Positions 49,273-59,769 of a DNA stretch of 64,000 bases are shown in pieces. Made by a program: the position numbers and the translations under genes. Positions within the stretch are counted from its first letter, which is position 1. Each line of letters opens with the position of its first letter. The notes under the pieces were generated by a model that was not told where the DNA came from, searched no databases, and was given only the letters and a program-made list of their open reading frames with translations. Source of the stretch: Phallusia mammillata (Eukaryota); contig OZ281496.1 of NCBI GenBank assembly GCA_965637545.1, positions 2,480,001 through 2,544,000 of the forward strand, read 5' to 3'.

Positions 49273-52200
49273 TTACTCGTCGTGCTGCTCGTGCGAATCC
49301 ATTCTCCGACGTTTGGCAGCTGGGCCGCAATATTCTGACGGCTCCGAGTCTTCACACTAAATTAAACATGGGTTGTAGATAGTTCATATTAACCAAGATA
49401 GAAATGAAACGTTTTGTTTATGCAATGCTAGTGTTAATATGCAATAGACATGGCTCTAAACCTAGAGTGCCAAACACAGGGGTCGGAATGGTCAATACAT
49501 GGGGTGATAAGCCTGTCATGGGGTCGCTGAGGTGTAGTCATGGAATGGCTGTACGAAACACTCTAACTTGGGGTATGATAACCATATTTCAAAGAGGTGT
49601 AAAAATGCGATTGCACCGGGCCTCCAAACAATCAGTACGCACGAATAAACTTGCAGGGCATTTAAGCAAATTTCATGAAAATAATAATAAAATGTTGAAC
49701 CACTGAAATCAGTAAATTGTTACCCAACTTGATGACAAATGTCATGGTTTTGCCAACTTTATCTGGTGATTGCAAAATGGGGTTTAGCAAAAAAATACAA
49801 AAAACTTACTCTTAAAATTTCAAATATGTTTGCGCCACTGCTATAGTTTCTGGTACTGAGCTCAAAATTAAAGCTTGTGAACCTCCTACAACAGTGGTGT
49901 TCAATCTTTTTCACCATACGACCTATTTTAGGAACCCGATGTAACTGACGACACCCAAACATTTTCATCGTTTTTGTCGCAATAAGTAAAATAAAATTTG
50001 AATGTAGGCAAAAATAGTGGTCTGAGTTCTCGCAGCTTTGTTAACCGTACAGTGACAAGTAACAAAGTATTTAAAATCATCATTTTTGATGTCGTCCTGT
50101 TATAATAGGCCGGAATTTGAATATCGAGACATAAAAAAGTTAAGGACTTTTTATTGCATATAAATGTTTTACTTTCGGGTCGCAACCCACAGGTTGAAAA
50201 CCATTGTTTTAGCGATGTTTTAATCGCAACGACAAAAGTTACTTGTAGAACAAGTTTATCTACCTGAGGAGTTTGACTGGTGGAAAGCACACCTGTAACA
50301 TATAAAACTTATGAATTAGTAACATATAAGGGGGACAGATATTCAGAGGTCATTTCAAATCTAACTTACGTTTGGTGGTATCAACGTTCCCTTGAGATCC
50401 TACTATTGATCCTCCGTCAACTATTGCCCCTTCCATGTGAACGTTCTGCTCTTGTTTTCCTTTATTGACTGTGTTTAAATGGCGTTTCAGTTTATTGCTA
50501 ATTTATAAAGTATTTTTTTCTTGCTATAAGCTTTTTTGCTAGTGAACAGTGTTTGTATTTGGTGTGTACATCTTTTCATAAAACTGATGAAATGACATAG
50601 AATTGTTGTCGTAAACTAATCCTAACTTTACTAACACAAGTTTCTGAAACGTTATTTTACCCCAATGAAACTAACAGCTTACTGGTTATAGATACTGCTG
50701 CAACATCTGCTTTTTGTAACTTTTTAGCAAAGGGATTCATAAAAAAAGTTCCTTCATCTCCTTTTCCATAAACAGTTGATTTTCCGTCAGTTGATTTGAT
50801 TAAAATTTTGAATTTGTCGTCTGTCTCTTCACGGTTATTTTGGTAAATTCCTATTTGAAATTCAAAGAGTGGTTTTGTACAAATTTCATATATGTCCAGT
50901 GTCGTTGGATCAGTGTCAAACCCGACAGGGCTCAAAATTTCGAATGATGCCCTTTCCGAACTGAAATAAAAATTGAAAAACTAACAACCCTGCCTCGTAT
51001 TGTGCATCGTATTTTATACCTAATTTTAAATGATCCTTGGTGTACTTCTTTTCTTAGGTAGTCAGAATTTAATAAATGAACAGCAGGAAAGTCGCATATA
51101 GAAACATATAACAACCGCTTTTTTGATTCCTCGGAAATAGACTCGTGGTCAAGCTTACATTTTAGAATTTTAGTTTTCGCCCAAAAATAATCCTTTATTT
51201 TTTCTAAAACATACCTGTAAAAAAATAATTTCATTAAAAAAATGCCAGGACGTTTACAACGACCGATTCTTGCCAGGTAAAATGAGTTGTATTGAACTTG
51301 TGTTTGAAATCACCATTGTAAAAAACGGTTTCAATGTCCTTCCATTTCAAACCATCAACACTTTTTTTTATCTGAAGTGTGACAACAAAGTTAAAAATTA
51401 ACAGTTAAACCAAAAAATTAAAAATTAAATTTAAATGATACCACAATCTGTTGTCGAACTTCCGAAACGTAGCATGTTGGTAAAGTGATAGAAATATCTC
51501 TTTTGAATTTTAAATGATTAGGTTCGCATTTAAGCATTGGAGTCAATTGGTCCTAAGCGAAATTAGAGGTGGTTAACTTTAGTTTACTGACACAAATTTT
51601 GTTTACCGTTTTGCTACGTCTTCCGTAACATGAAGTGAGTTTGATTGTGGTCGGTTGACTCAAAGCATTTTGTGGAATATCAACAATACATCCTCCAACC
51701 GTAAGTGTTGCTCCCTCGGATCCAACAATTAACGACTTAGTTTCAAAAAACTCGTAGTCGTCCTAACAAAACACAGCATTTTTTACAATATGCTTTTAGC
51801 TTGGTACACATTTATTGAATGAATAATAGTGTTCTGGATAAAACGTGGTGCTAACTAATTATAGCGCATTAAACATTTTTTATGGAAATAGCAAACTAGA
51901 AACAAAATCAAGCACACAACGGTCCTTAAAAACAGAAAGTTAAAAAAAACTTACCCGGTGTTTCAGCAACTCCAGTTTTGGTTTAATAATTTTCATCACA
52001 TCAGCAGGCAAGTTGCCAGATTTTTCATAATTTTGGCGATCTTCTATATTGTACAAACAAGTCGCAATGTGCTCACCACCTTCGTTGCCAAACAAATTTT
52101 CTCCCACATCAAAATATCTCATCTAGCAAGACAAGTAGATAAGAAACGTGTTTGGAACAGGACATAGCCGAATTACACATATACGAGTAACATTCAAACA

Positions 52201-55200
52201 AGTTATATTGTAGTATTTTCTGACTGAAAGCGATTGATAAAAAATAATGATACAGAAAGTTTACTATTAAAGCCAAGTTAATGGACGTACCTAAACTTTA
52301 CGCAACAAAGCAATTGTGCATATTAAATAGTTGAATCCCGAGAGCTAAAATTGAGTTTAACAGAGTTGAAACTCAATATAAATTTGACAACTTACTAAAA
52401 CCTACGTGAAACCAAACCAAAAAGCCGAGTACGATTTGCACTTTTTGCGTACCGGGTATGGCCTTTTGTAGATGGCTGATGACAATTTGATTATCCCACT
52501 ATCAGTTATGAAACAGTTTTGGAGACAAAGTTCATCAATGTTGTGTATGCAAGATGCTAAATATTTTGCTCCGTCATCTTTTACTTGATTCCACTCGAGC
52601 GATAATCTTTCCATCTGAAAAGTCAATGTCCAAAAATGTTAACCTTTATATGTAAATTATGTTGGTGTTTTCAGTAAATATCAAAACAAAACGAATATTC
52701 AAAGTACAAGAAATTTGAAACAAACTAAATCGTAAACGACAAAAAAATCGTTTTATAGCTTTCCCGATAAACGAAGTGCGTTGAAAAGTAATATTATTAT
52801 AGTTGACTATTTGGTGACATATTTAAAAAATATTTAGGGTTTTCGGAGAAGAATTTTAACTTTTAGGCGTATTTGTGGGGGAAAATCATGTTTCTGGATG
52901 AAGGTACAATATTTTGCTATGAATAACAAAAGCTTTAAAGTTGAATTTTTGAAAAAAAGAATTCAGCAGTGAAAAGGTTAAAACCAGCCCTGCAGAAAGC
53001 ACTCTAATTGAAACTGTTTAAATAATCGGCAAACTTCCGAAGCAACCGAAATTCTTAAATTTTATCAATTGAAGAAATTTGGTTTCATCACTGCTTGTTT
53101 TATCGCACTGCAAGTTTCAAAAAACAGTACGACTAAACAACGAGCGAATTTAAACCAAATACACTTACCCACCCTATAACAATGGATTCAACTGAGTCAT
53201 ATCGCTCCATGGTTTAGGCCAGTGGTTCCCAAACTATGCGCCGCGGCACACTGGTGTGCCGCGAGATGTCATTAGGTGTGCCGCAAAAAATATGGAAATT
53301 AAAATCAATCAAGTAGAGTAGCAGTACCAGGTGCTTAGACCACTAGGCCAACATGCTCCACGTCTCTGAGATGTTCAACTAGGCTATTTAACTATGAGAG
53401 TGACCTGTATAGCGGCTTTATGACTTTATAGTCAGTGCCTTTGTCAACATATGTTTTATTCAAATGTTCGAAGTGCGCCAAATATTTTTTGTTTTTTCTA
53501 AAATGCGCCTTAAAAGAAAAAAGTTTGGGAACCACTGGTTTAGGCCAACACGGTTAATAATAATAAACAGAGTTGCCCTATGACGAGGAAAACGGACATT
53601 TTGGAACGAAAACCAAAAATGTGCGAAACCGGTTAATCGTAGTTGATTTATAAGGTATTTTGGTGCTTTGTTTTCCGTGACCTTAAAATTAATGTAAACA
53701 CCAAATATCAGAAATACTTTTATGCAGCAGACGGCCATTTGAGGACAAATAAAAAATAGTTAAAATGACATGCTACACATCCGAAAAATGACTGTGTCAT
53801 ACCTTTTGCTTTGGGCGGTTATGAGCAACAGTTAAGTCCAAATTTACAATTTTTAAGCGTTGTTTGACAAACAAAAAACGCTTAGTAAATTTTCGTCCGA
53901 TGACCACCAAAGAACACAACAACCAATGAGATTCACACTAAAATTCAAAGCTTTTCGTATTAAACAAGGCGACTAGTGGTCTGCATGTTAGGTTCATTGC
54001 GTGATGAGAGCGATCTTACGTCGTCAAATGCGTGATACGATATTTCGATAGTGCCACACCGATTTTTTTTTATAAGAAGCATCCTTCTAGGTATTGTGTT
54101 TGTAGCTAATCTTTCCTGTGTGAATTTGAGACAATTTATGTTCTTGGTCCAAGCTAGTTCATTTGGATTTAGATCAAGAAGCGCGATGCATTTACAAACA
54201 AAGTTTACAAAATTACCGGCTTGGTCCGATCGCTGATGGCTGATGACAGGGCTTTGGTGCCCCTGCTCGTGATTCCACAATCCCGAAGTCCAAGTCGGTC
54301 AATAAAATGGATGCAAGTAGCTAAGACTTTCGCTCCACCATCTCTAATCGGATTGCGCGCCAGCTCCAATTTGTCCATCTATGGGGCAATTGTATGTTAA
54401 CGGCTTTATTAATGAAACAATTATTAGAATATAAGCTTATATGTTTATATTTAAACAAGCACCCGATTACGCGAGTTTCTCAGTTTACATCTATACCTTG
54501 CTCTCTGTAGTCAAATTTATGACAAATCTCCCGAATAATGCAACAATTCATATTAGTCACCACCCCCTCATCCCGGAACACAGAATTTTAGAAAAAAGAA
54601 TTCAGCAGTGAACGGGTTATAACCAACCCTGCAGGGAGCACTCTAATTGAAACTGTTTAAATAATCAGAAACTTCCGAAGCAACCAAAAACTCTTAAATT
54701 TTATCAATTGAAGACATTTGATTTTATCACTGCTTGTTTTATCGCACTGCAAGTTTCAGACAAAGTACGACTAAACAACGAGCGAATTTAAACCAAATAC
54801 ACGTACCAGAGGGGTGACTAATATGAACTGTAGCATTACGTTATAGTGTTACAACTTTAGATGGTTTTCAACTTTCGTGTAATTCTTAGCAAGGGGGCAT
54901 GTAGTCATAGACATAAACTTATATATTTGTAATATCACTGAAGTTTAAACGATTTTATAATATGCTTTAAGGTTTTGTAATAAAACTTGATATGATAGTG
55001 TAGTTCTTTGAGAATGGGATGAATCGTAGAAAATTTAAATCATTTGTATACACGTTGAAAACCAACGCCTACCGAGTTTGTCCGTTTGCTGATGGCTGAT
55101 GCCAACGCTTTAATACCACTGCTAGTAATTCCACAACGTTCAAGGTCAAGTTTTTTAATGTTATGTACGCAAGTTGCCAACTCTTTCGCTCCATCATCCT

Positions 55201-58200
55201 CGATAGGATTGAAACAAAGGGACAACTTCTTAATCTGTAAATCATTTCATAGTTACGTATTAGAGATTGTTGTCTTATTGAAGTTATACACTTAATTTCT
55301 TAAAATGCAGCAAATTCACTGATCAGTAAAAATATTGACTACCACAGCAGGATTGATGTAAGATATTAGAAATTATTTTTGTCAAAATCGTTTGGCCTGT
55401 GAACAAAAAGTCCCCACCTAAGTAAACTTAAATATATCAAAGTCACAGATTGAAACTTAAGTAGAGGGGAAGTAATAAATTCTTAGGATTTTGTACCTGG
55501 GAAACCCATCGTTTTAAAAATCGTTTGCGGGTCACCACTTGTGTGAAACCTTGCGAATTACTGTAATGAGCGCAACAAAGCTAACGGGTCGTACAGTGTG
55601 TAAACAGCAGTTTGTACCCTGTACCGTATCGTCTATATACAGAACACGGGAAATAATTTTGCTCTTTCCGTCAATGAGATTTGATAAAAGATAATTTATT
55701 GTTGGACGTTTGGTCAGATCAAATCCTCCCTTCTATAAGTCAACAACGCCAAACTGTCGTATAAAAGTCGACCGACAAGCGTTTTTTTTTTACGGACCAG
55801 AGCTGTTGTTCCGCCATGTAAAAATATCCATAGGTGTGTTTTACTGTGTTCATTTCATCATACGCAGCAACTTTCGATTTTACACTAACGTGGGAGAGGA
55901 CAAATATTTGTTTTTACTGGAACTCCACTCCAGGGCCGCTACAATCAACACGGTCGCTTATCTGGGGGAAATGAGTATCTATAAATCTTTTACCGACGTT
56001 GGACCTCGTAACTTATTTCGGGTTTCTGTTGATTACAAGCAGAACGGTTGAATTTGGTGTAAAAAGTTGTGTGATCGGGGAGCTCGTGCGTTATGATGAA
56101 TTGACCAATTGACCGACTTTTTTACCATTGTCACAGAGAAATGACGATATGCAAATTGTTCATTACGTTGTACTAGGTTATGTCGCTGGGAGTGACTTGG
56201 ACACTGAGAGCGGGGCTTTGGGGTAAAGTTTTGTGTTTGCGTATAGTTTTGTTATTGTTGGACATGCTTTTTTTGTTAGGTACAAAACCTTGACGAGATA
56301 GGCAAAATGGATAGTACATAATAAATATATCAAGTGTCATGGTTGCGGGACTTGCGTTTGTGGTCACAGTTGTCATTTTTAACAAGCAGCCGTTTTTCCA
56401 CTGGACTTGACCGGAAGTTTCTTATCCTAAGCATGTGGGCAAACATACAATTGACCGGGTAAAATATTTGGAACGTTAGATTCCTCTTCGATGAATTAAA
56501 CACCGCGAAATGTGATTGCCCGCCACTGTTTTGTACAGTTCGTGCGACTCAGCCGTGGCATAGCTGTTTGAGCAGTTTGTAATAAAACTGCAAGGACTAC
56601 CATTGTAATACAGTGTTTTGTCAGCAAAAGTCAGTTTGCCGAAAATATAACATTTGGGGTTTATCACTATTGACTGCAATGTGTCCAAGTTCTCATTTGA
56701 CTCTTTGAAACTTGACTACGGGTTGATTAAAAAGTTATCACTTGGACGAATCAAAATCAGCGATGATAAAGAAGCTTTACCCTATTTAATTTGTAAAATA
56801 GCTGGTAGTAAAATTAAAAAGATTTCATAAACGTGTTATTAACTAAGACAGTTTGCGAATTTATTGATATAGTATTAAAAACTTTTTCAATTTAAATATG
56901 CTTGCTTGTTGGCAAAAGAATAAGCACGATTACCCAGCTTTGGTCAAATGAACAAATGAAAAAAAGTCAAATTTTTTAATACGTTAGGTATCTAGTGCGA
57001 AACACGATTCTTACTGGATTCGGTCGCTTGCTGATCGCCGAGGACAATGCAACAATGCTTTCGCTAGTGATGTCACAATCCCAAAACAAGAGCTGATCAA
57101 TATTATGTATACAGTTAGCAAATGCTTCTACATCGTGGCATTGAAGTGAACTGCTGTTGAACAATATTTTTTGTATCTGTAAAGCAATGATATAATTTGA
57201 ACTTACTACTTGTTACAGAAACAATAAAAACACCTGAACATAAGTGACTGGTCAGCAGTAAAGTTTACGAACGAGTTTCAGCGTCTTCATTTTAAATTGC
57301 TGTGATCAAAAATCATAAAGCACGATTTTTGGTAAATTTTAGATTTTTGAATAGAACGTGTTGTCAACTAGAAAGGTGGCGATCCTATATAGTTCCAGAA
57401 ACAATCTACAAACATAAAAAACCGAAAACACATGTGTTCATGCGAATTAGTTGCGGTAAAAAAATGGTGCAAATATTAACCCAAAGTTATAACAGTTTTG
57501 TCCACTTTCGTTTTACTACATTATATTGTCAAATATTTAGGTAAGTAGTTAAAAAAAAAAAGTTCTTCCAATACTCTTGGAATTTTACTCTGTAGCTTTG
57601 ATCTCAATTTAGCTGTCTAGAACCAGTTATGTTAAAATTTCCTAAAAAAACATTTTTCACTTTAATGTTATTCAACAACGTTTTGTCTGACATTTATCGA
57701 GTTCAAATCAAGCCTAAAGTATGAAACCTTCGCCAAAACTAAAAACGCACATGCTAACCAAATAAAACCATATAGCATTGCTGCGCAAAAACAGCTGATT
57801 TCAATCATCAAAAAGACTGTCTAGTAAAACGTCTGTTTGAGTTTGAAGCACAGGTCTACCAAGGGAATCACTCTCATGTGATTTGTGTGCTCTGGGGCGT
57901 GAAGGTTTAGCGAACCTTTTTTTTTTTTTGTGCAAATATTGGGGCTGTAAGGGTAACCAACTGGTCCGAACAAGCTAAATTTTTAACACGAAACGCACTA
58001 CAAACAAATGGTCAGCGTTTCAGCACATTAGGAGTTCTGTTTTCCTGAAGCACTGGTAAACCTAAAAACAAATACTTGAGAATAAAGGGGTAAAAATAGA
58101 TAAATTCAACAAATTTTGAGTGGAGCACTTTGGGTGAATAACTAACAGGTGTGTGAAGTTTTGTTTATAGTTGTTTGGTATCGGTTTAGTTCTACTTGCT

Positions 58201-59769
58201 TACTGGTTTGTTTAGGTTTGAGATTCCTTCAGCAAGATGTTGAATGTCTTCAGTTTTGATTTTACAGTGGCGAAATTCCAAACTGTTTACTTTATGCAGA
58301 CAGTTGACGAAGATGTTTAGTGATCCTCGGGGCTACATAAAGTCATAAAAACATACAGAATTATATAGCTTGTGCTTCGCGTACTACTAATTTGTCGTAT
58401 CGTCGCAATTCATATGCACAATATCGTATCAAAAGCGAAACAAACTTAACTCAACAATTTTGATAGCCGCAGCCTAAACAATGGTGTCGCATTTGAAAAA
58501 AATCGTCCAAACTAAGTATTATTTGGTTAACAAACATATTTTCCTTTACAACGCGCCGATAAGCTAAAGCAAAACTGTAAAAATCACTTTTTAAATTAAA
58601 CTTTACAACAGTTTCTCACTTACCAGTATAGAGAGGTTGAGATATAAATCGTGAGATGTTATCGAGTGACAAATCAAATCCGTCAAACCAGTTACCTCTG
58701 AAGTCGACAAAAACGTTTTTTCGTAGCGACCAGTAGTTGAAAATTTTGGATTAACCCTAATCCGCTTTGGAATTTGATCCGCTATTTTACGAAAAATTGC
58801 TTCATTTTGTGCTTCGTACACTAATGAACACCACGTTTTCAGTTGACAAGCCATGTAAGGTTTATAGGAACTGGACAAAATGGTTGTCAACATTCGACTT
58901 CTTTGCATCCATTGTTTGTCTTTGAATAGTTCATAAAATTGTGATTGAATATTAGGATTGAGAAAACCAAACATATGGCGATCGACAGGCAAAGTTTTCA
59001 AAGGAAACTGTTTTACTAAACTGTTTAATTGTTGATTTGACATAAAAACAGCAGCATAAATAGCTGCAAAGTAAAGTTTCCAAACATCATGTGTAAATTC
59101 ATTGCTACAATCCAACAACTCAAATTGAAAGCTGGCTGCCTTGTCATGAAATGTCGATGAAAACATTGACAAATTTTTATACGATTTATCAGATGTAAGC
59201 GACTTTTGAGTTTGATTCCATGCTAAGCGTGCTAGCCCTTCCAAGTTTAAATCTTGATTTTTAAGTTGTTCAGATTTAATAAGCATCGAAAACATTGTTG
59301 TCAATATTTCCGTTTCTGTTTTAAAATCTCTTTTCGGATTTTTGAAAACTACGTAGATGATTATTCTTCGCACGTACTCGTCATCACACGCTTCAAGTAA
59401 AACTCTGCGTTGTTCTAAATACTTGTAAACTTTTTCCCAGTTTTGACCGCATATCTCTTTGCAAACGTCTAGAAGGAGAAATACAAGCTAACTATGTCTG
59501 TGTATGATATGCTCTATACGCTTCGTTTGGCCTAAGCGTTTGTAAAATTGATTTTGTCACATTCTACGTTAGTTATATGAAATGACCATTCGGTATTCAA
59601 TACAAAGTTGTAGCATTAACATGGCGGTTGCGGATCAATTTACACAAACGATTGCCAATTATGTTGCAACTGCATTACAGCTTGTTGATATATTAAACAA
59701 ACTTACGTTCAATGTAATAAAATCTGAGAAAATCAGACGATGTCGGGGCCTGCAAATTCAAAACACAAT
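49273..59769 (-). CDS. NLR-like protein: degenerate NACHT-associated region, LRRs, ZU5-UPA, C-terminal Gly-rich motif
   Basis: Phase-consistent exons: 59769-59707, 59468-58624, 58332-58204, 57176-57015, 55234-55073, 54378-54217, 52614-52453, 52122-51955, 51762-51607, 51552-51442, 51371-51274 (GC donor), 51214-51020, 50960-50683, 50468-50370, 50292-50264, 49356-49273. No internal stops found. Probable further 5' exons up to ATG 61303. Confidence 0.8.
49440..49700 (+). mobile_element. SINE-like 3' fragment
   Basis: GC-richer block ending in an AATAATAATAA tail; similar SINE-like scraps at 47475, 53330 (minus-strand A-box TGGCCTAGTGG) and 63770. Confidence 0.3.
49892..50206. mobile_element. Degenerate hAT MITE (GGGTCGC.ACCC family)
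   Basis: CAGTGGTGTTCAA / TTGAAAACCATTG ends; no clear TSD. Confidence 0.6.
53220..53537. mobile_element. hAT MITE (TGCCGCG family)
   Basis: TIR CAGTGGTTCCCAAAC; exact TSD GTTTAGGC. Confidence 0.95.
54546..54832. mobile_element. TIR MITE; its internal ~210 bp recurs at 52960-53170
   Basis: TTCATATTAGTCACC..CCCC / GGGGTGACTAATATGAA ends; ~90% direct repeat of 54590-54810 at 52960-53170. Confidence 0.7.

What the first reader, a model, noticed from the sequence alone, without database searches (positions are those of the whole stretch)
51215..51284. PIDD-type autoproteolysis motif TTHF|TWY completed only by a GC-AG intron
Seen: exon 51371 reads ...NTTHFTW. Every GT donor downstream gives phase 0 and an early stop, but a GC donor (CTG|GCAAGA, 59-nt intron 51273-51215, similar to neighbouring 54-70-nt introns) gives HFTWYVLEKIKDYFW in frame. 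Known: PIDD1 self-cleaves at HF|SW sites after its ZU5 domains, and Thr serves as the nucleophile in the GAIN HL|T motif. Inference: an intact self-cleavage site, with a non-canonical donor that could act as a splicing switch to a truncated form.
Basis: partly seen in the sequence, partly recalled or inferred. Interest (0 to 1): 0.8.

Follow-up and report, generated by a model that had tools for sequence, protein, structure and literature searches.

The report
GC-AG intron at ZU5 self-cleavage motif
A rare but normal type of intron (GC-AG) very probably joins the two halves of a PIDD/NLRP1-like self-cleaving module in a sea-squirt-type leucine-rich-repeat gene, leaving a conserved His-Phe-Thr site at the joint; the site is plausible but untested, and the idea of a splicing switch has no support.

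Summary
On the minus strand, exon 51371-51274 ends ..N-T-T-H-F-T-W(TG). A 59-nt intron (51273-51215) starts GCAAGA and ends at a strong acceptor (T-rich tract, CAG). Splicing it gives HFTW-YVLEKIKDYFW in frame.

No RNA read covers this joint, so support is comparative. The only homologue found, L001, has a 98-nt exon of the same length. It ends at the same codon position (TG|G of Trp) with a canonical GT donor. The spliced products align without a gap across the joint (blastp E 7.6e-37). TTHFTW is identical despite two synonymous changes. DNA contigs from two runs confirm the GC.

The module is ZU5-like: Pfam ZU5 E 0.0034 and the ZO-1 ZU5 domain E 0.08, both on exon C. The UPA half could not be verified.

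HFTW is also encoded without splicing, and one canonical GT donor gives an in-frame product through a poor acceptor. The "splicing switch" is unsupported.

A variant DNA contig carries a stop codon 30 codons after the joint.

Earlier notes of this scan report related ZU5-UPA genes elsewhere in this genome.

Verdict: a real and ordinary GC-AG intron; a plausible Thr variant of the HFS site.

The parts
51955..52122 (-). Last exon of the leucine-rich-repeat region (exon A), directly upstream of the ZU5 exons
   Evidence: RNA contig in run X4 covers 52006-52123. Its 35 overhanging letters, reverse-complemented, read as the end of the upstream LRR exon (..AIYKRPYP). Upstream exons match Pfam LRR_6.
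51607..51762 (-). Exon B, the putative N-terminal strands of the ZU5-like domain
   Evidence: Open frame continuous with exons A and C, with GT-AG borders. No Pfam or PDB hit on its own.
51442..51552 (-). Exon C, the ZU5 core block (LTPMLKCEPNHLKFKRDISITLPTCY)
   Evidence: Pfam ZU5 PF00791: E 0.0034, 18.1 bits against a cut-off of 21, profile positions 56-82 of 97. ZO-1 ZU5 domain 2kxs: E 0.082, same block.
51274..51371 (-). Exon D, the last ZU5 exon, ending ..FNTTHFT + TG of Trp. Codons: His 51284-51282, Phe 51281-51279, Thr 51278-51276. The predicted scissile bond is Phe|Thr.
   Evidence: The homologous exon in L001 (56-153) is also 98 nt and has TTHFTW identical, with synonymous changes in the Phe and Thr codons.
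51215..51273 (-). 59-nt GC-AG intron, phase 2 (CTG|GCAAGA ... TTTTTTTACAG|G)
   Evidence: It is the only in-frame join to the strong acceptor that keeps HFTW. L001 has a 357-nt GT-AG intron at the same position and phase. The GC is confirmed in DNA contigs. No RNA junction evidence.
51020..51214 (-). Exon E, the first exon after the site (presumed start of UPA): YVLEKIKDYFWAKTK..
   Evidence: 33% identical to exon E of L001, with E4 I6 K7 Y9 W11 invariant straight after the joint. No PDB hit.
50683..50960 (-). Exon F, the second exon of the presumed UPA half
   Evidence: Homologue P0005 found at E 4.3e-4 in 1.84 billion proteins; 32% identity. Its 3' end is confirmed by the RNA contig overhang, whose reverse complement is GTATCTATAACCA. 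The AF2 model is all-beta but has pLDDT 39.5.
50370..50468 (-). Exon G (tail)
   Evidence: RNA contig junctions F->G and G->H in X4.
50264..50292 (-). Exon H (tail)
   Evidence: RNA contig junctions at 50368/50290 (cut +2) and 50264/49356 in X4.
49273..49356 (-). Coding part of the last exon. The protein ends ..AAKRRRMDSHEQHDE, with the stop at 49275-49273. No death-fold domain follows the module.
   Evidence: the RNA contig continues through it.

Best explanation
The stretch is a real phase-2 U2-type GC-AG intron (51273-51215). It joins the last exon of a ZU5-like domain to the first exon of the following half, presumed to be UPA. The gene lies on the minus strand and has the order LRR, ZU5, presumed UPA, short tail. 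It belongs to a sea-squirt-type animal; that taxon comes from earlier scan notes and was not verified here.

The joint leaves His-Phe-Thr-Trp at the end of ZU5, the position of the HFS sites of PIDD1. The most likely working is inferred, not shown. Phe would anchor in the ZU5 core. The Thr hydroxyl would attack the Phe-Thr peptide bond (N-O acyl shift) and the ester would be hydrolysed. This would leave an LRR-ZU5 fragment and a fragment starting TWYVLEK.. that carries the downstream half and a roughly 70-residue tail. The two could stay non-covalently associated, as in PIDD, NLRP1 and CARD8.

My odds: the GC-AG intron is real, about 0.8. The site is homologous to the HFS site, about 0.75. Actual self-cleavage occurs, about 0.5.
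For: Shown:
- The sequence and the in-frame product.
- The donor has G at -1 and A, A, G at +3 to +5, as functional GC donors need. The acceptor has a T7 run and a TAAT about 22 nt upstream.
- The homologue L001 has a 98-nt exon D, a GT donor at the same TG|G position, and gapless alignment across the joint. Blastp of the spliced D-E-F products gives E 7.6e-37 at 36.7% identity.
- TTHFTW is 6 of 6 identical although exon D is only 69% identical in DNA, with synonymous changes in the Phe and Thr codons.
- ZU5 hits fall on exon C.
- From exon B to HF is 121 residues. From memory, that fits the length of a ZU5 domain.
- Glu lies 18 residues before the Thr in both homologues. That is the spacing of E1195 to S1213 in NLRP1 (PMC9700037) and of E279 to S297 in CARD8 (PMC3210808).
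- The gene is transcribed and spliced on both sides of the module (X4 contigs).

From the literature:
- Ser, Thr or Cys can serve as nucleophile in this class of reaction (PMC3210808).
- GC-AG introns are 556 of 113,879 (0.49%) in Ciona (PMC2760879).
Against: - No RNA contig covers the D/E joint.
- The ZU5 hit is below Pfam's cut-off and rests on one 37-residue exon.
- The UPA half has no detectable sequence relative in the PDB, and the partial fold was unusable (pLDDT 39.5).
- The His at -27 of the NLRP1/CARD8 triad is Val here.
- No characterised ZU5 autoprotease that I could find uses Thr.
- UNC5 and ankyrin ZU5-UPA modules do not cleave.
- A variant DNA contig in X1 and X2 has a nonsense codon in exon E. 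At least one allele or copy is therefore decaying.
Confidence: 0.6

Rival explanations
1. The intron is real, but the ZU5-UPA joint does not cleave. HFT-W would then be conserved for structural reasons (buried Phe, first strand of the next domain), as in the non-cleaving UNC5 and ankyrin modules.
For: The FIIND-type His at -27 is absent (Val in both homologues). Thr is unprecedented among the tested ZU5 sites. Conservation alone cannot separate structure from catalysis.
Against: The full H-F-[S/T] tripeptide is present, together with Glu at -18. According to PMC3210808, UNC5b has Leu at the Phe position, so non-cleavers tend to lack the tripeptide.
Confidence: 0.3
2. The GC is a disabled GT donor in a decaying gene copy. 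The intron is retained, and the product stops 16 codons after HFTW.
For: The homologue has GT at this position. A co-existing variant contig carries a nonsense codon in exon E, at depth 226 against about 300 in X1 and 94 against about 140 in X2. No junction read exists.
Against: All exons downstream remain open to a shared stop. They are spliced in RNA. The rest of the donor (G at -1; A, A, G at +3 to +5) is the pattern that working GC donors show. GC-AG introns are a normal 0.5% class in ascidians.
Confidence: 0.15
3. A canonical GT-AG intron is used instead: donor 51257 (GTT|GTAAAC) and acceptor 51193, 65 nt long, giving HFTWQESVV-DYFW.
For: It is in frame and uses GT-AG.
Against: The acceptor is purine-rich (AGAAAAAATAAAG; 7 of 20 pyrimidines). 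The model deletes the residues E, I and K that are invariant in the homologue right after the joint, and it moves the intron away from the conserved position.
Confidence: 0.05
4. The weak GC donor is a regulated switch between a full-length protein and an LRR-ZU5-only protein.
For: Only general knowledge that GC donors are weaker and enriched among alternatively spliced introns (from memory, not tested here). Retention gives a stop soon after the motif, both here and in L001, where TGA follows Trp directly.
Against: There is no expression data at the joint. The homologue has an ordinary GT, so a switch is not a conserved feature. A stop soon after an intron start is the usual state of introns.
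Confidence: 0.1

Closest known systems
PIDD1 (LRR - ZU5 - ZU5 - UPA - death domain), self-cleaving at two HFS sites (S446, S588)
   Same: The order is the same: leucine-rich repeats, then ZU5, then a further domain. There is a His-Phe-hydroxyl-residue tripeptide at the end of ZU5, with His at -2. PIDD1 cleavage is cited from PMC7883297 and PMC3210808.
   Different: Here there is one ZU5-like domain, not two. Thr replaces Ser. The repeats are of the RNI type (LRR_6). No death domain follows: the protein stops after a roughly 70-residue tail.
NLRP1 / CARD8 FIIND (ZU5-UPA), cleaving at SF|S with the triad E1195-H1186-S1213
   Same: LRR lies upstream of ZU5-UPA, as in NLRP1. Glu lies 18 residues before the nucleophile.
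   Different: The tripeptide is HFT, not SFS. Val stands at -27 where the triad His lies. There is no CARD. No Pfam FIIND hit on any exon. A NACHT domain is not shown: the large upstream exon only resembles STAND helical domains at 0.85-0.88, which is a lead only.
UNC5CL and the Nup98 HF|S autoproteolytic sites
   Same: The same tripeptide logic: a buried Phe at P1 and a hydroxyl nucleophile at P1'.
   Different: Nup98 has a different fold. UNC5CL is membrane-anchored and has a death domain. Neither was compared by sequence here.
GAIN domain GPS site (H-L|T or H-L|S) of adhesion GPCRs
   Same: It shows that Thr can be the nucleophile in an H-x-[S/T] self-cleavage site (abstracts listed).
   Different: An unrelated fold; the analogy concerns the chemistry only.
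U2-type GC-AG introns
   Same: GC..AG ends, a near-consensus remainder of the donor, and a normal acceptor. This class is 0.49% of Ciona introns (PMC2760879).
   Different: Nothing unusual. The homologous intron elsewhere uses GT.

Membership tests
U2-type GC-AG intron | GC at +1/+2 and AG at the 3' end, confirmed in the DNA | tested here: met
   A DNA unitig covering 51193-51364 is identical in X1 and X2.
U2-type GC-AG intron | The rest of the donor is close to consensus (G at -1; A, A, G at +3 to +5), with a pyrimidine tract at the acceptor | tested here: met
   The donor reads CTG|GCAAGA. The acceptor has 12 of 20 pyrimidines with a T7 run.
U2-type GC-AG intron | Spliced RNA joining 51274 to 51214 | tested here: inconclusive
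   The only RNA run with contigs on this gene (X4) covers exon A and exons G-I plus 13 nt of exon F, but not exons B-E.
U2-type GC-AG intron | Intron position and phase conserved in a homologue | tested here: met
   In L001, exon D is 98 nt, the donor is TG|GTGACT at the same codon position, and the protein alignment crosses the joint without a gap.
ZU5 domain (Pfam PF00791) | Profile match at or above the curated cut-off | tested here: inconclusive
   Only single exons could be submitted. Exon C scores 18.1 bits against a cut-off of 21, E 0.0034. The same block matches the ZO-1 ZU5 domain at E 0.082. Exons B and D have no hit.
Autoproteolytic ZU5-UPA module (PIDD1, UNC5CL, NLRP1, CARD8) | [H/S]-F-S tripeptide at the ZU5/UPA border | tested here: inconclusive
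   H-F-T is at the expected place, with Thr instead of the Ser seen in every characterised member. It is conserved in the homologue.
Autoproteolytic ZU5-UPA module (PIDD1, UNC5CL, NLRP1, CARD8) | Supporting Glu (-18) and His (-27), as in the NLRP1/CARD8 triad | tested here: inconclusive
   By spacing only, Glu is present at -18 in both homologues, while -27 is Val. His occurs at -2 and -8. No structural alignment was possible.
Autoproteolytic ZU5-UPA module (PIDD1, UNC5CL, NLRP1, CARD8) | UPA fold directly after the site | tested here: inconclusive
   No PDB sequence hit for profiles of exons E and F. The AF2 model of exon F alone is all-beta but has pLDDT 39.5. The Atlas lead is to PLAT-like beta sandwiches at 0.86 or below.
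Autoproteolytic ZU5-UPA module (PIDD1, UNC5CL, NLRP1, CARD8) | C-terminal death-fold domain (DD or CARD) released by cleavage | tested here: not met
   The RNA-supported exons G-I encode about 70 residues and then a stop at 49275-49273.
Autoproteolytic ZU5-UPA module (PIDD1, UNC5CL, NLRP1, CARD8) | Cleavage demonstrated, and dependent on the P1' residue | not testable with these tools
   This needs protein expression and mutants.

The most novel reading that the evidence does not exclude
HF|T is a working threonine-nucleophile version of the ZU5 self-cleavage site, in an LRR sensor that releases a UPA-plus-tail fragment with no death-fold domain. In addition, the weak GC donor is used as a regulated switch that yields an LRR-ZU5-only decoy when the intron is retained.
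Probability: 0.08. Interest if true: 0.6.

Novelty: new member of a known kind. Interest (0 to 1): 0.3.

Why it matters
For annotation, gene predictors that allow only GT donors will truncate or mis-join this gene at the most informative residue of its ZU5 module. The same may apply to other members of this lineage-specific LRR-ZU5-UPA family.

For biology, if the Thr site cleaves, it would be the first Thr-nucleophile ZU5 autoprotease that I know of. It would also add a death-domain-less relative to the PIDD/NLRP1 class in a chordate outgroup of vertebrates. That claim is modest and cheap to test (tagged expression with T-to-A and T-to-S mutants).

The GC-AG intron itself is an ordinary minor-class feature.

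Tried and rejected
- **RNA support for the joint.** Two run searches and the one read-laying run were used. X1 and X2 proved to be DNA. X4 is RNA but does not cover exons B-E. X3 had nothing.
- **Homologue searches with exon F.** The exhaustive HMMER search gave one true relative, P0005, and four repeat or low-complexity matches. The word-index searches gave nothing for exon F and only P0005 itself for P0005.
- **Paralogue in the window.** None found by tblastn.
- **UPA by sequence.** PDB searches with two-sequence profiles of exons E and F gave no relevant hit. Pfam had nothing on exons B, D, E, F or on the L001 exons.
- **Folding.** Exon F alone (pLDDT 39.5) and the 294-residue upstream exon (pLDDT 36.1) were too poor for a fold search, so none was run.
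- **Folding or scanning the spliced ZU5-UPA protein.** Not done. A spliced sequence has no reference in these tools, and I did not type it in.
- **Source of L001.** DRR090687 does not occur in the paper library, so I cannot say whether L001 is an orthologue or a paralogue.
- **PIDD paper.** The Tinel 2007 paper is not held.
- **Thr in a ZU5 site.** No paper was found that tests Thr at P1' of a ZU5 site.

Full report
**What is in the sequence**

The gene lies on the minus strand. Exon D (51371-51274) reads ..K-F-N-T-T-H-F-T and ends with TG of a Trp codon. The next letters are GCAAGA (51273 onward). Fifty-nine bases later the intron ends TTTTTTTACAG (51215). Exon E begins G TAT GTT TTA GAA.., so the spliced product reads HFTW-YVLEKIKDYFW. 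Without splicing, the frame runs HFTWQESVVVNVLAFF and then stops.

The neighbouring introns are 54, 70 and 59 nt, all GT-AG.

**How unique is the GC-AG solution**

I enumerated every GT, GC or AT donor against every AG acceptor that keeps exon D and exon E open and in frame.
- With the strong acceptor at 51215, the GC donor at 51273 is the only in-frame donor that keeps HFTW.
- The one in-frame GT donor for that acceptor (51297, CAA|GTTCAA) removes FNTTHFTW.
That acceptor follows AGAAAAAATAAAG, with 7 of 20 pyrimidines upstream against 12 of 20 at 51215.
- HFTW does not need the intron: read-through also gives TGG. The intron matters because it joins ZU5 to the downstream half in frame.

**DNA and RNA reads**

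Both run searches found two holders, X1 and X2, from one study. Laid on 49300-52300, they are DNA, because their contigs cross introns. A unitig covering 51193-51364 is identical to the window in both, so the GC is real DNA and no GT variant was seen.

Run X4 is RNA, because its contigs carry GT..AG joints on the minus strand.
- One contig covers exon A from 52006 to 52123. Its 35 overhanging letters, reverse-complemented, read as the end of the upstream LRR exon (..AIYKRPYP).
- Another runs from the last 13 letters of exon F (the overhang's reverse complement is GTATCTATAACCA) into exon G (50468-50370), exon H (50292-50264) and the last exon (from 49356).

The gene is therefore transcribed and spliced on both sides of the module. 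No RNA contig covers exons B-E, so the joint 51274/51214 has no direct support and no direct contradiction. The read tools are exhausted.

**Comparative evidence**

An exhaustive HMMER search of 1.84 billion proteins with exon F gave one true relative, a 102-residue ORF fragment, P0005. Its contig, L001 (1264 nt, a Logan assembly of DRR090687), still holds introns and carries homologues of exons D, E and F.
- Exon D of L001 is 98 nt, the same length as here. It encodes ..F-H-T-T-H-F-T and ends ACA TG|GTGACT.
- That is a canonical GT donor at the same place in the Trp codon. A 357-nt intron follows, then ..GATATAG|G TGG GGT ATT GAA...
- After the joint the two proteins read W-YVLEKIKDYFW and W-WGIEWIKNYLW. 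There is no gap, and E, I, K, Y and W are invariant.
- The spliced D-E-F products align end to end at 36.7% identity, with pairwise blastp E 7.6e-37.
- The next intron (E/F) is also conserved in position and phase.
- Exon D is only 69% identical in DNA (10 synonymous and 13 replacement codon differences). Even so, T-T-H-F-T-W is identical, with synonymous changes in the Phe and Thr codons.

This is the main argument that the GC-AG intron is real and that the hexapeptide is under protein-level selection. I could not tell whether L001 is an orthologue or a paralogue.

**What the module is**

- Upstream exons match Pfam LRR_6.
- Exon C matches Pfam ZU5 at E 0.0034, below the cut-off, on profile positions 56-82 of 97. 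It also matches the ZU5 domain of ZO-1 at E 0.082 over the same 26 residues.
- From the start of exon B to HF is 121 residues. From memory, that fits the length of a ZU5 domain.
- NLRP1's triad is E1195-H1186-S1213 (PMC9700037) and CARD8 uses E279, H270 and S297 (PMC3210808). That places Glu at -18 and His at -27.
- Here, and in L001, Glu is at -18 and Val is at -27, with His at -2 and -8.
- The site thus looks like the PIDD/Nup98 kind (HFS) rather than the FIIND kind (SFS plus a distant His).
- Ser, Thr or Cys can start the acyl shift in this class of reaction (PMC3210808). I found no tested ZU5 site with Thr.

The half after the site could not be shown to be UPA.
- No Pfam or PDB sequence hit was found.
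- The Atlas gave only weak beta-sandwich leads.
- The AF2 model of exon F alone was all-beta but unusable (pLDDT 39.5).
- The spliced module could not be folded or scanned, because a spliced sequence has no reference in these tools. I left that step out.

The protein ends about 70 residues after exon F (..KRRRMDSHEQHDE, stop at 49275-49273) with no death-fold domain.

**A caution**

A variant DNA contig is present in both X1 and X2. It differs from the window at 51125, 51133, 51144 and 51165. In the gene these are Ser30-to-stop in exon E, one Glu-to-Lys change and two silent changes. Its depth is 226 against about 300 in X1 and 94 against about 140 in X2.

Either another allele or a near-identical copy is therefore broken 30 codons after the site. 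This fits a fast-turnover gene family, and it keeps alive the rival that the GC is a donor mutation in a decaying copy. Three points count against that rival:
- The remaining donor letters are those that working GC donors need.
- All downstream exons are open and spliced in RNA.
- GC-AG introns are a normal 0.49% of ascidian introns (556 of 113,879 in Ciona, PMC2760879).

**Context from earlier scan notes (unchecked leads)**

The notes call this genome sea-squirt-type. They list other ZU5(HFS)-UPA genes that lack death domains, including NACHT-less LRR-ZU5 genes, and other GC-AG introns. I used the taxon only to choose the Ciona paper.

**Verdict**

- The GC-AG intron is very probably real (about 0.8) and ordinary.
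- The HF-T site is a conserved, position-equivalent variant of the PIDD HFS site. Cleavage is plausible (about 0.5) but untested.
- The splicing-switch idea has no support.
- This is a new member of a known kind, of modest interest, and mainly useful for correct gene models of this family.

Noticed in passing
window 51125-51165 (exon E), minus-strand gene: A variant DNA contig in runs X1 and X2 carries four changes. One of them (51125 G>T on the + strand) turns Ser30 of exon E into a stop, 30 codons after the HF|T site. It may be an allele or a near-identical paralogue. Its depth is about 70% of the flanking unitigs.
   Followed up: partly
window 49273-50468: RNA contigs support three small 3' exons (50468-50370, 50292-50264, 49356 onward). 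They encode a roughly 70-residue tail rich in Gly, Ser, Gln and Asn, with KRRR near the end. No CARD or death domain is present.
   Followed up: partly
window 58606-59487 (minus): A 294-residue single exon upstream of the LRR exons has no Pfam hit. It resembles NACHT/STAND-associated helical domains (NLRC4_HD2/WHD_NOD2, NCH2, SNaCT) only at Atlas scores of 0.85-0.88. The AF2 model is all-helical but has pLDDT 36. No P-loop exon was looked for.
   Followed up: partly
window 52400-57200 (minus): The LRR exons sit in repeated exon-plus-intron units. Even intronic reading frames recur, for example NLQCDKTSSD.. at 53116 and 54755, about 1.64 kb apart. This suggests recent tandem duplication of LRR units.
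   Followed up: no
window 51714, 50177 and 50211: DNA contigs of X1 and X2 leave the window sequence at these points and run on for about 250 unlike letters (table 7). This suggests paralogous copies or structural variants of this gene elsewhere in the genome.
   Followed up: no
window 51365 and 51382: A minor DNA variant, at about 30% of depth in X1 and X2, changes Lys3 of exon D to Glu and removes 3 nt from the C/D intron.
   Followed up: no
L001 150-160: In the homologue, the letters after the Trp codon are TGA. Retention of its intron would therefore end the protein exactly at HFTW.
   Followed up: no
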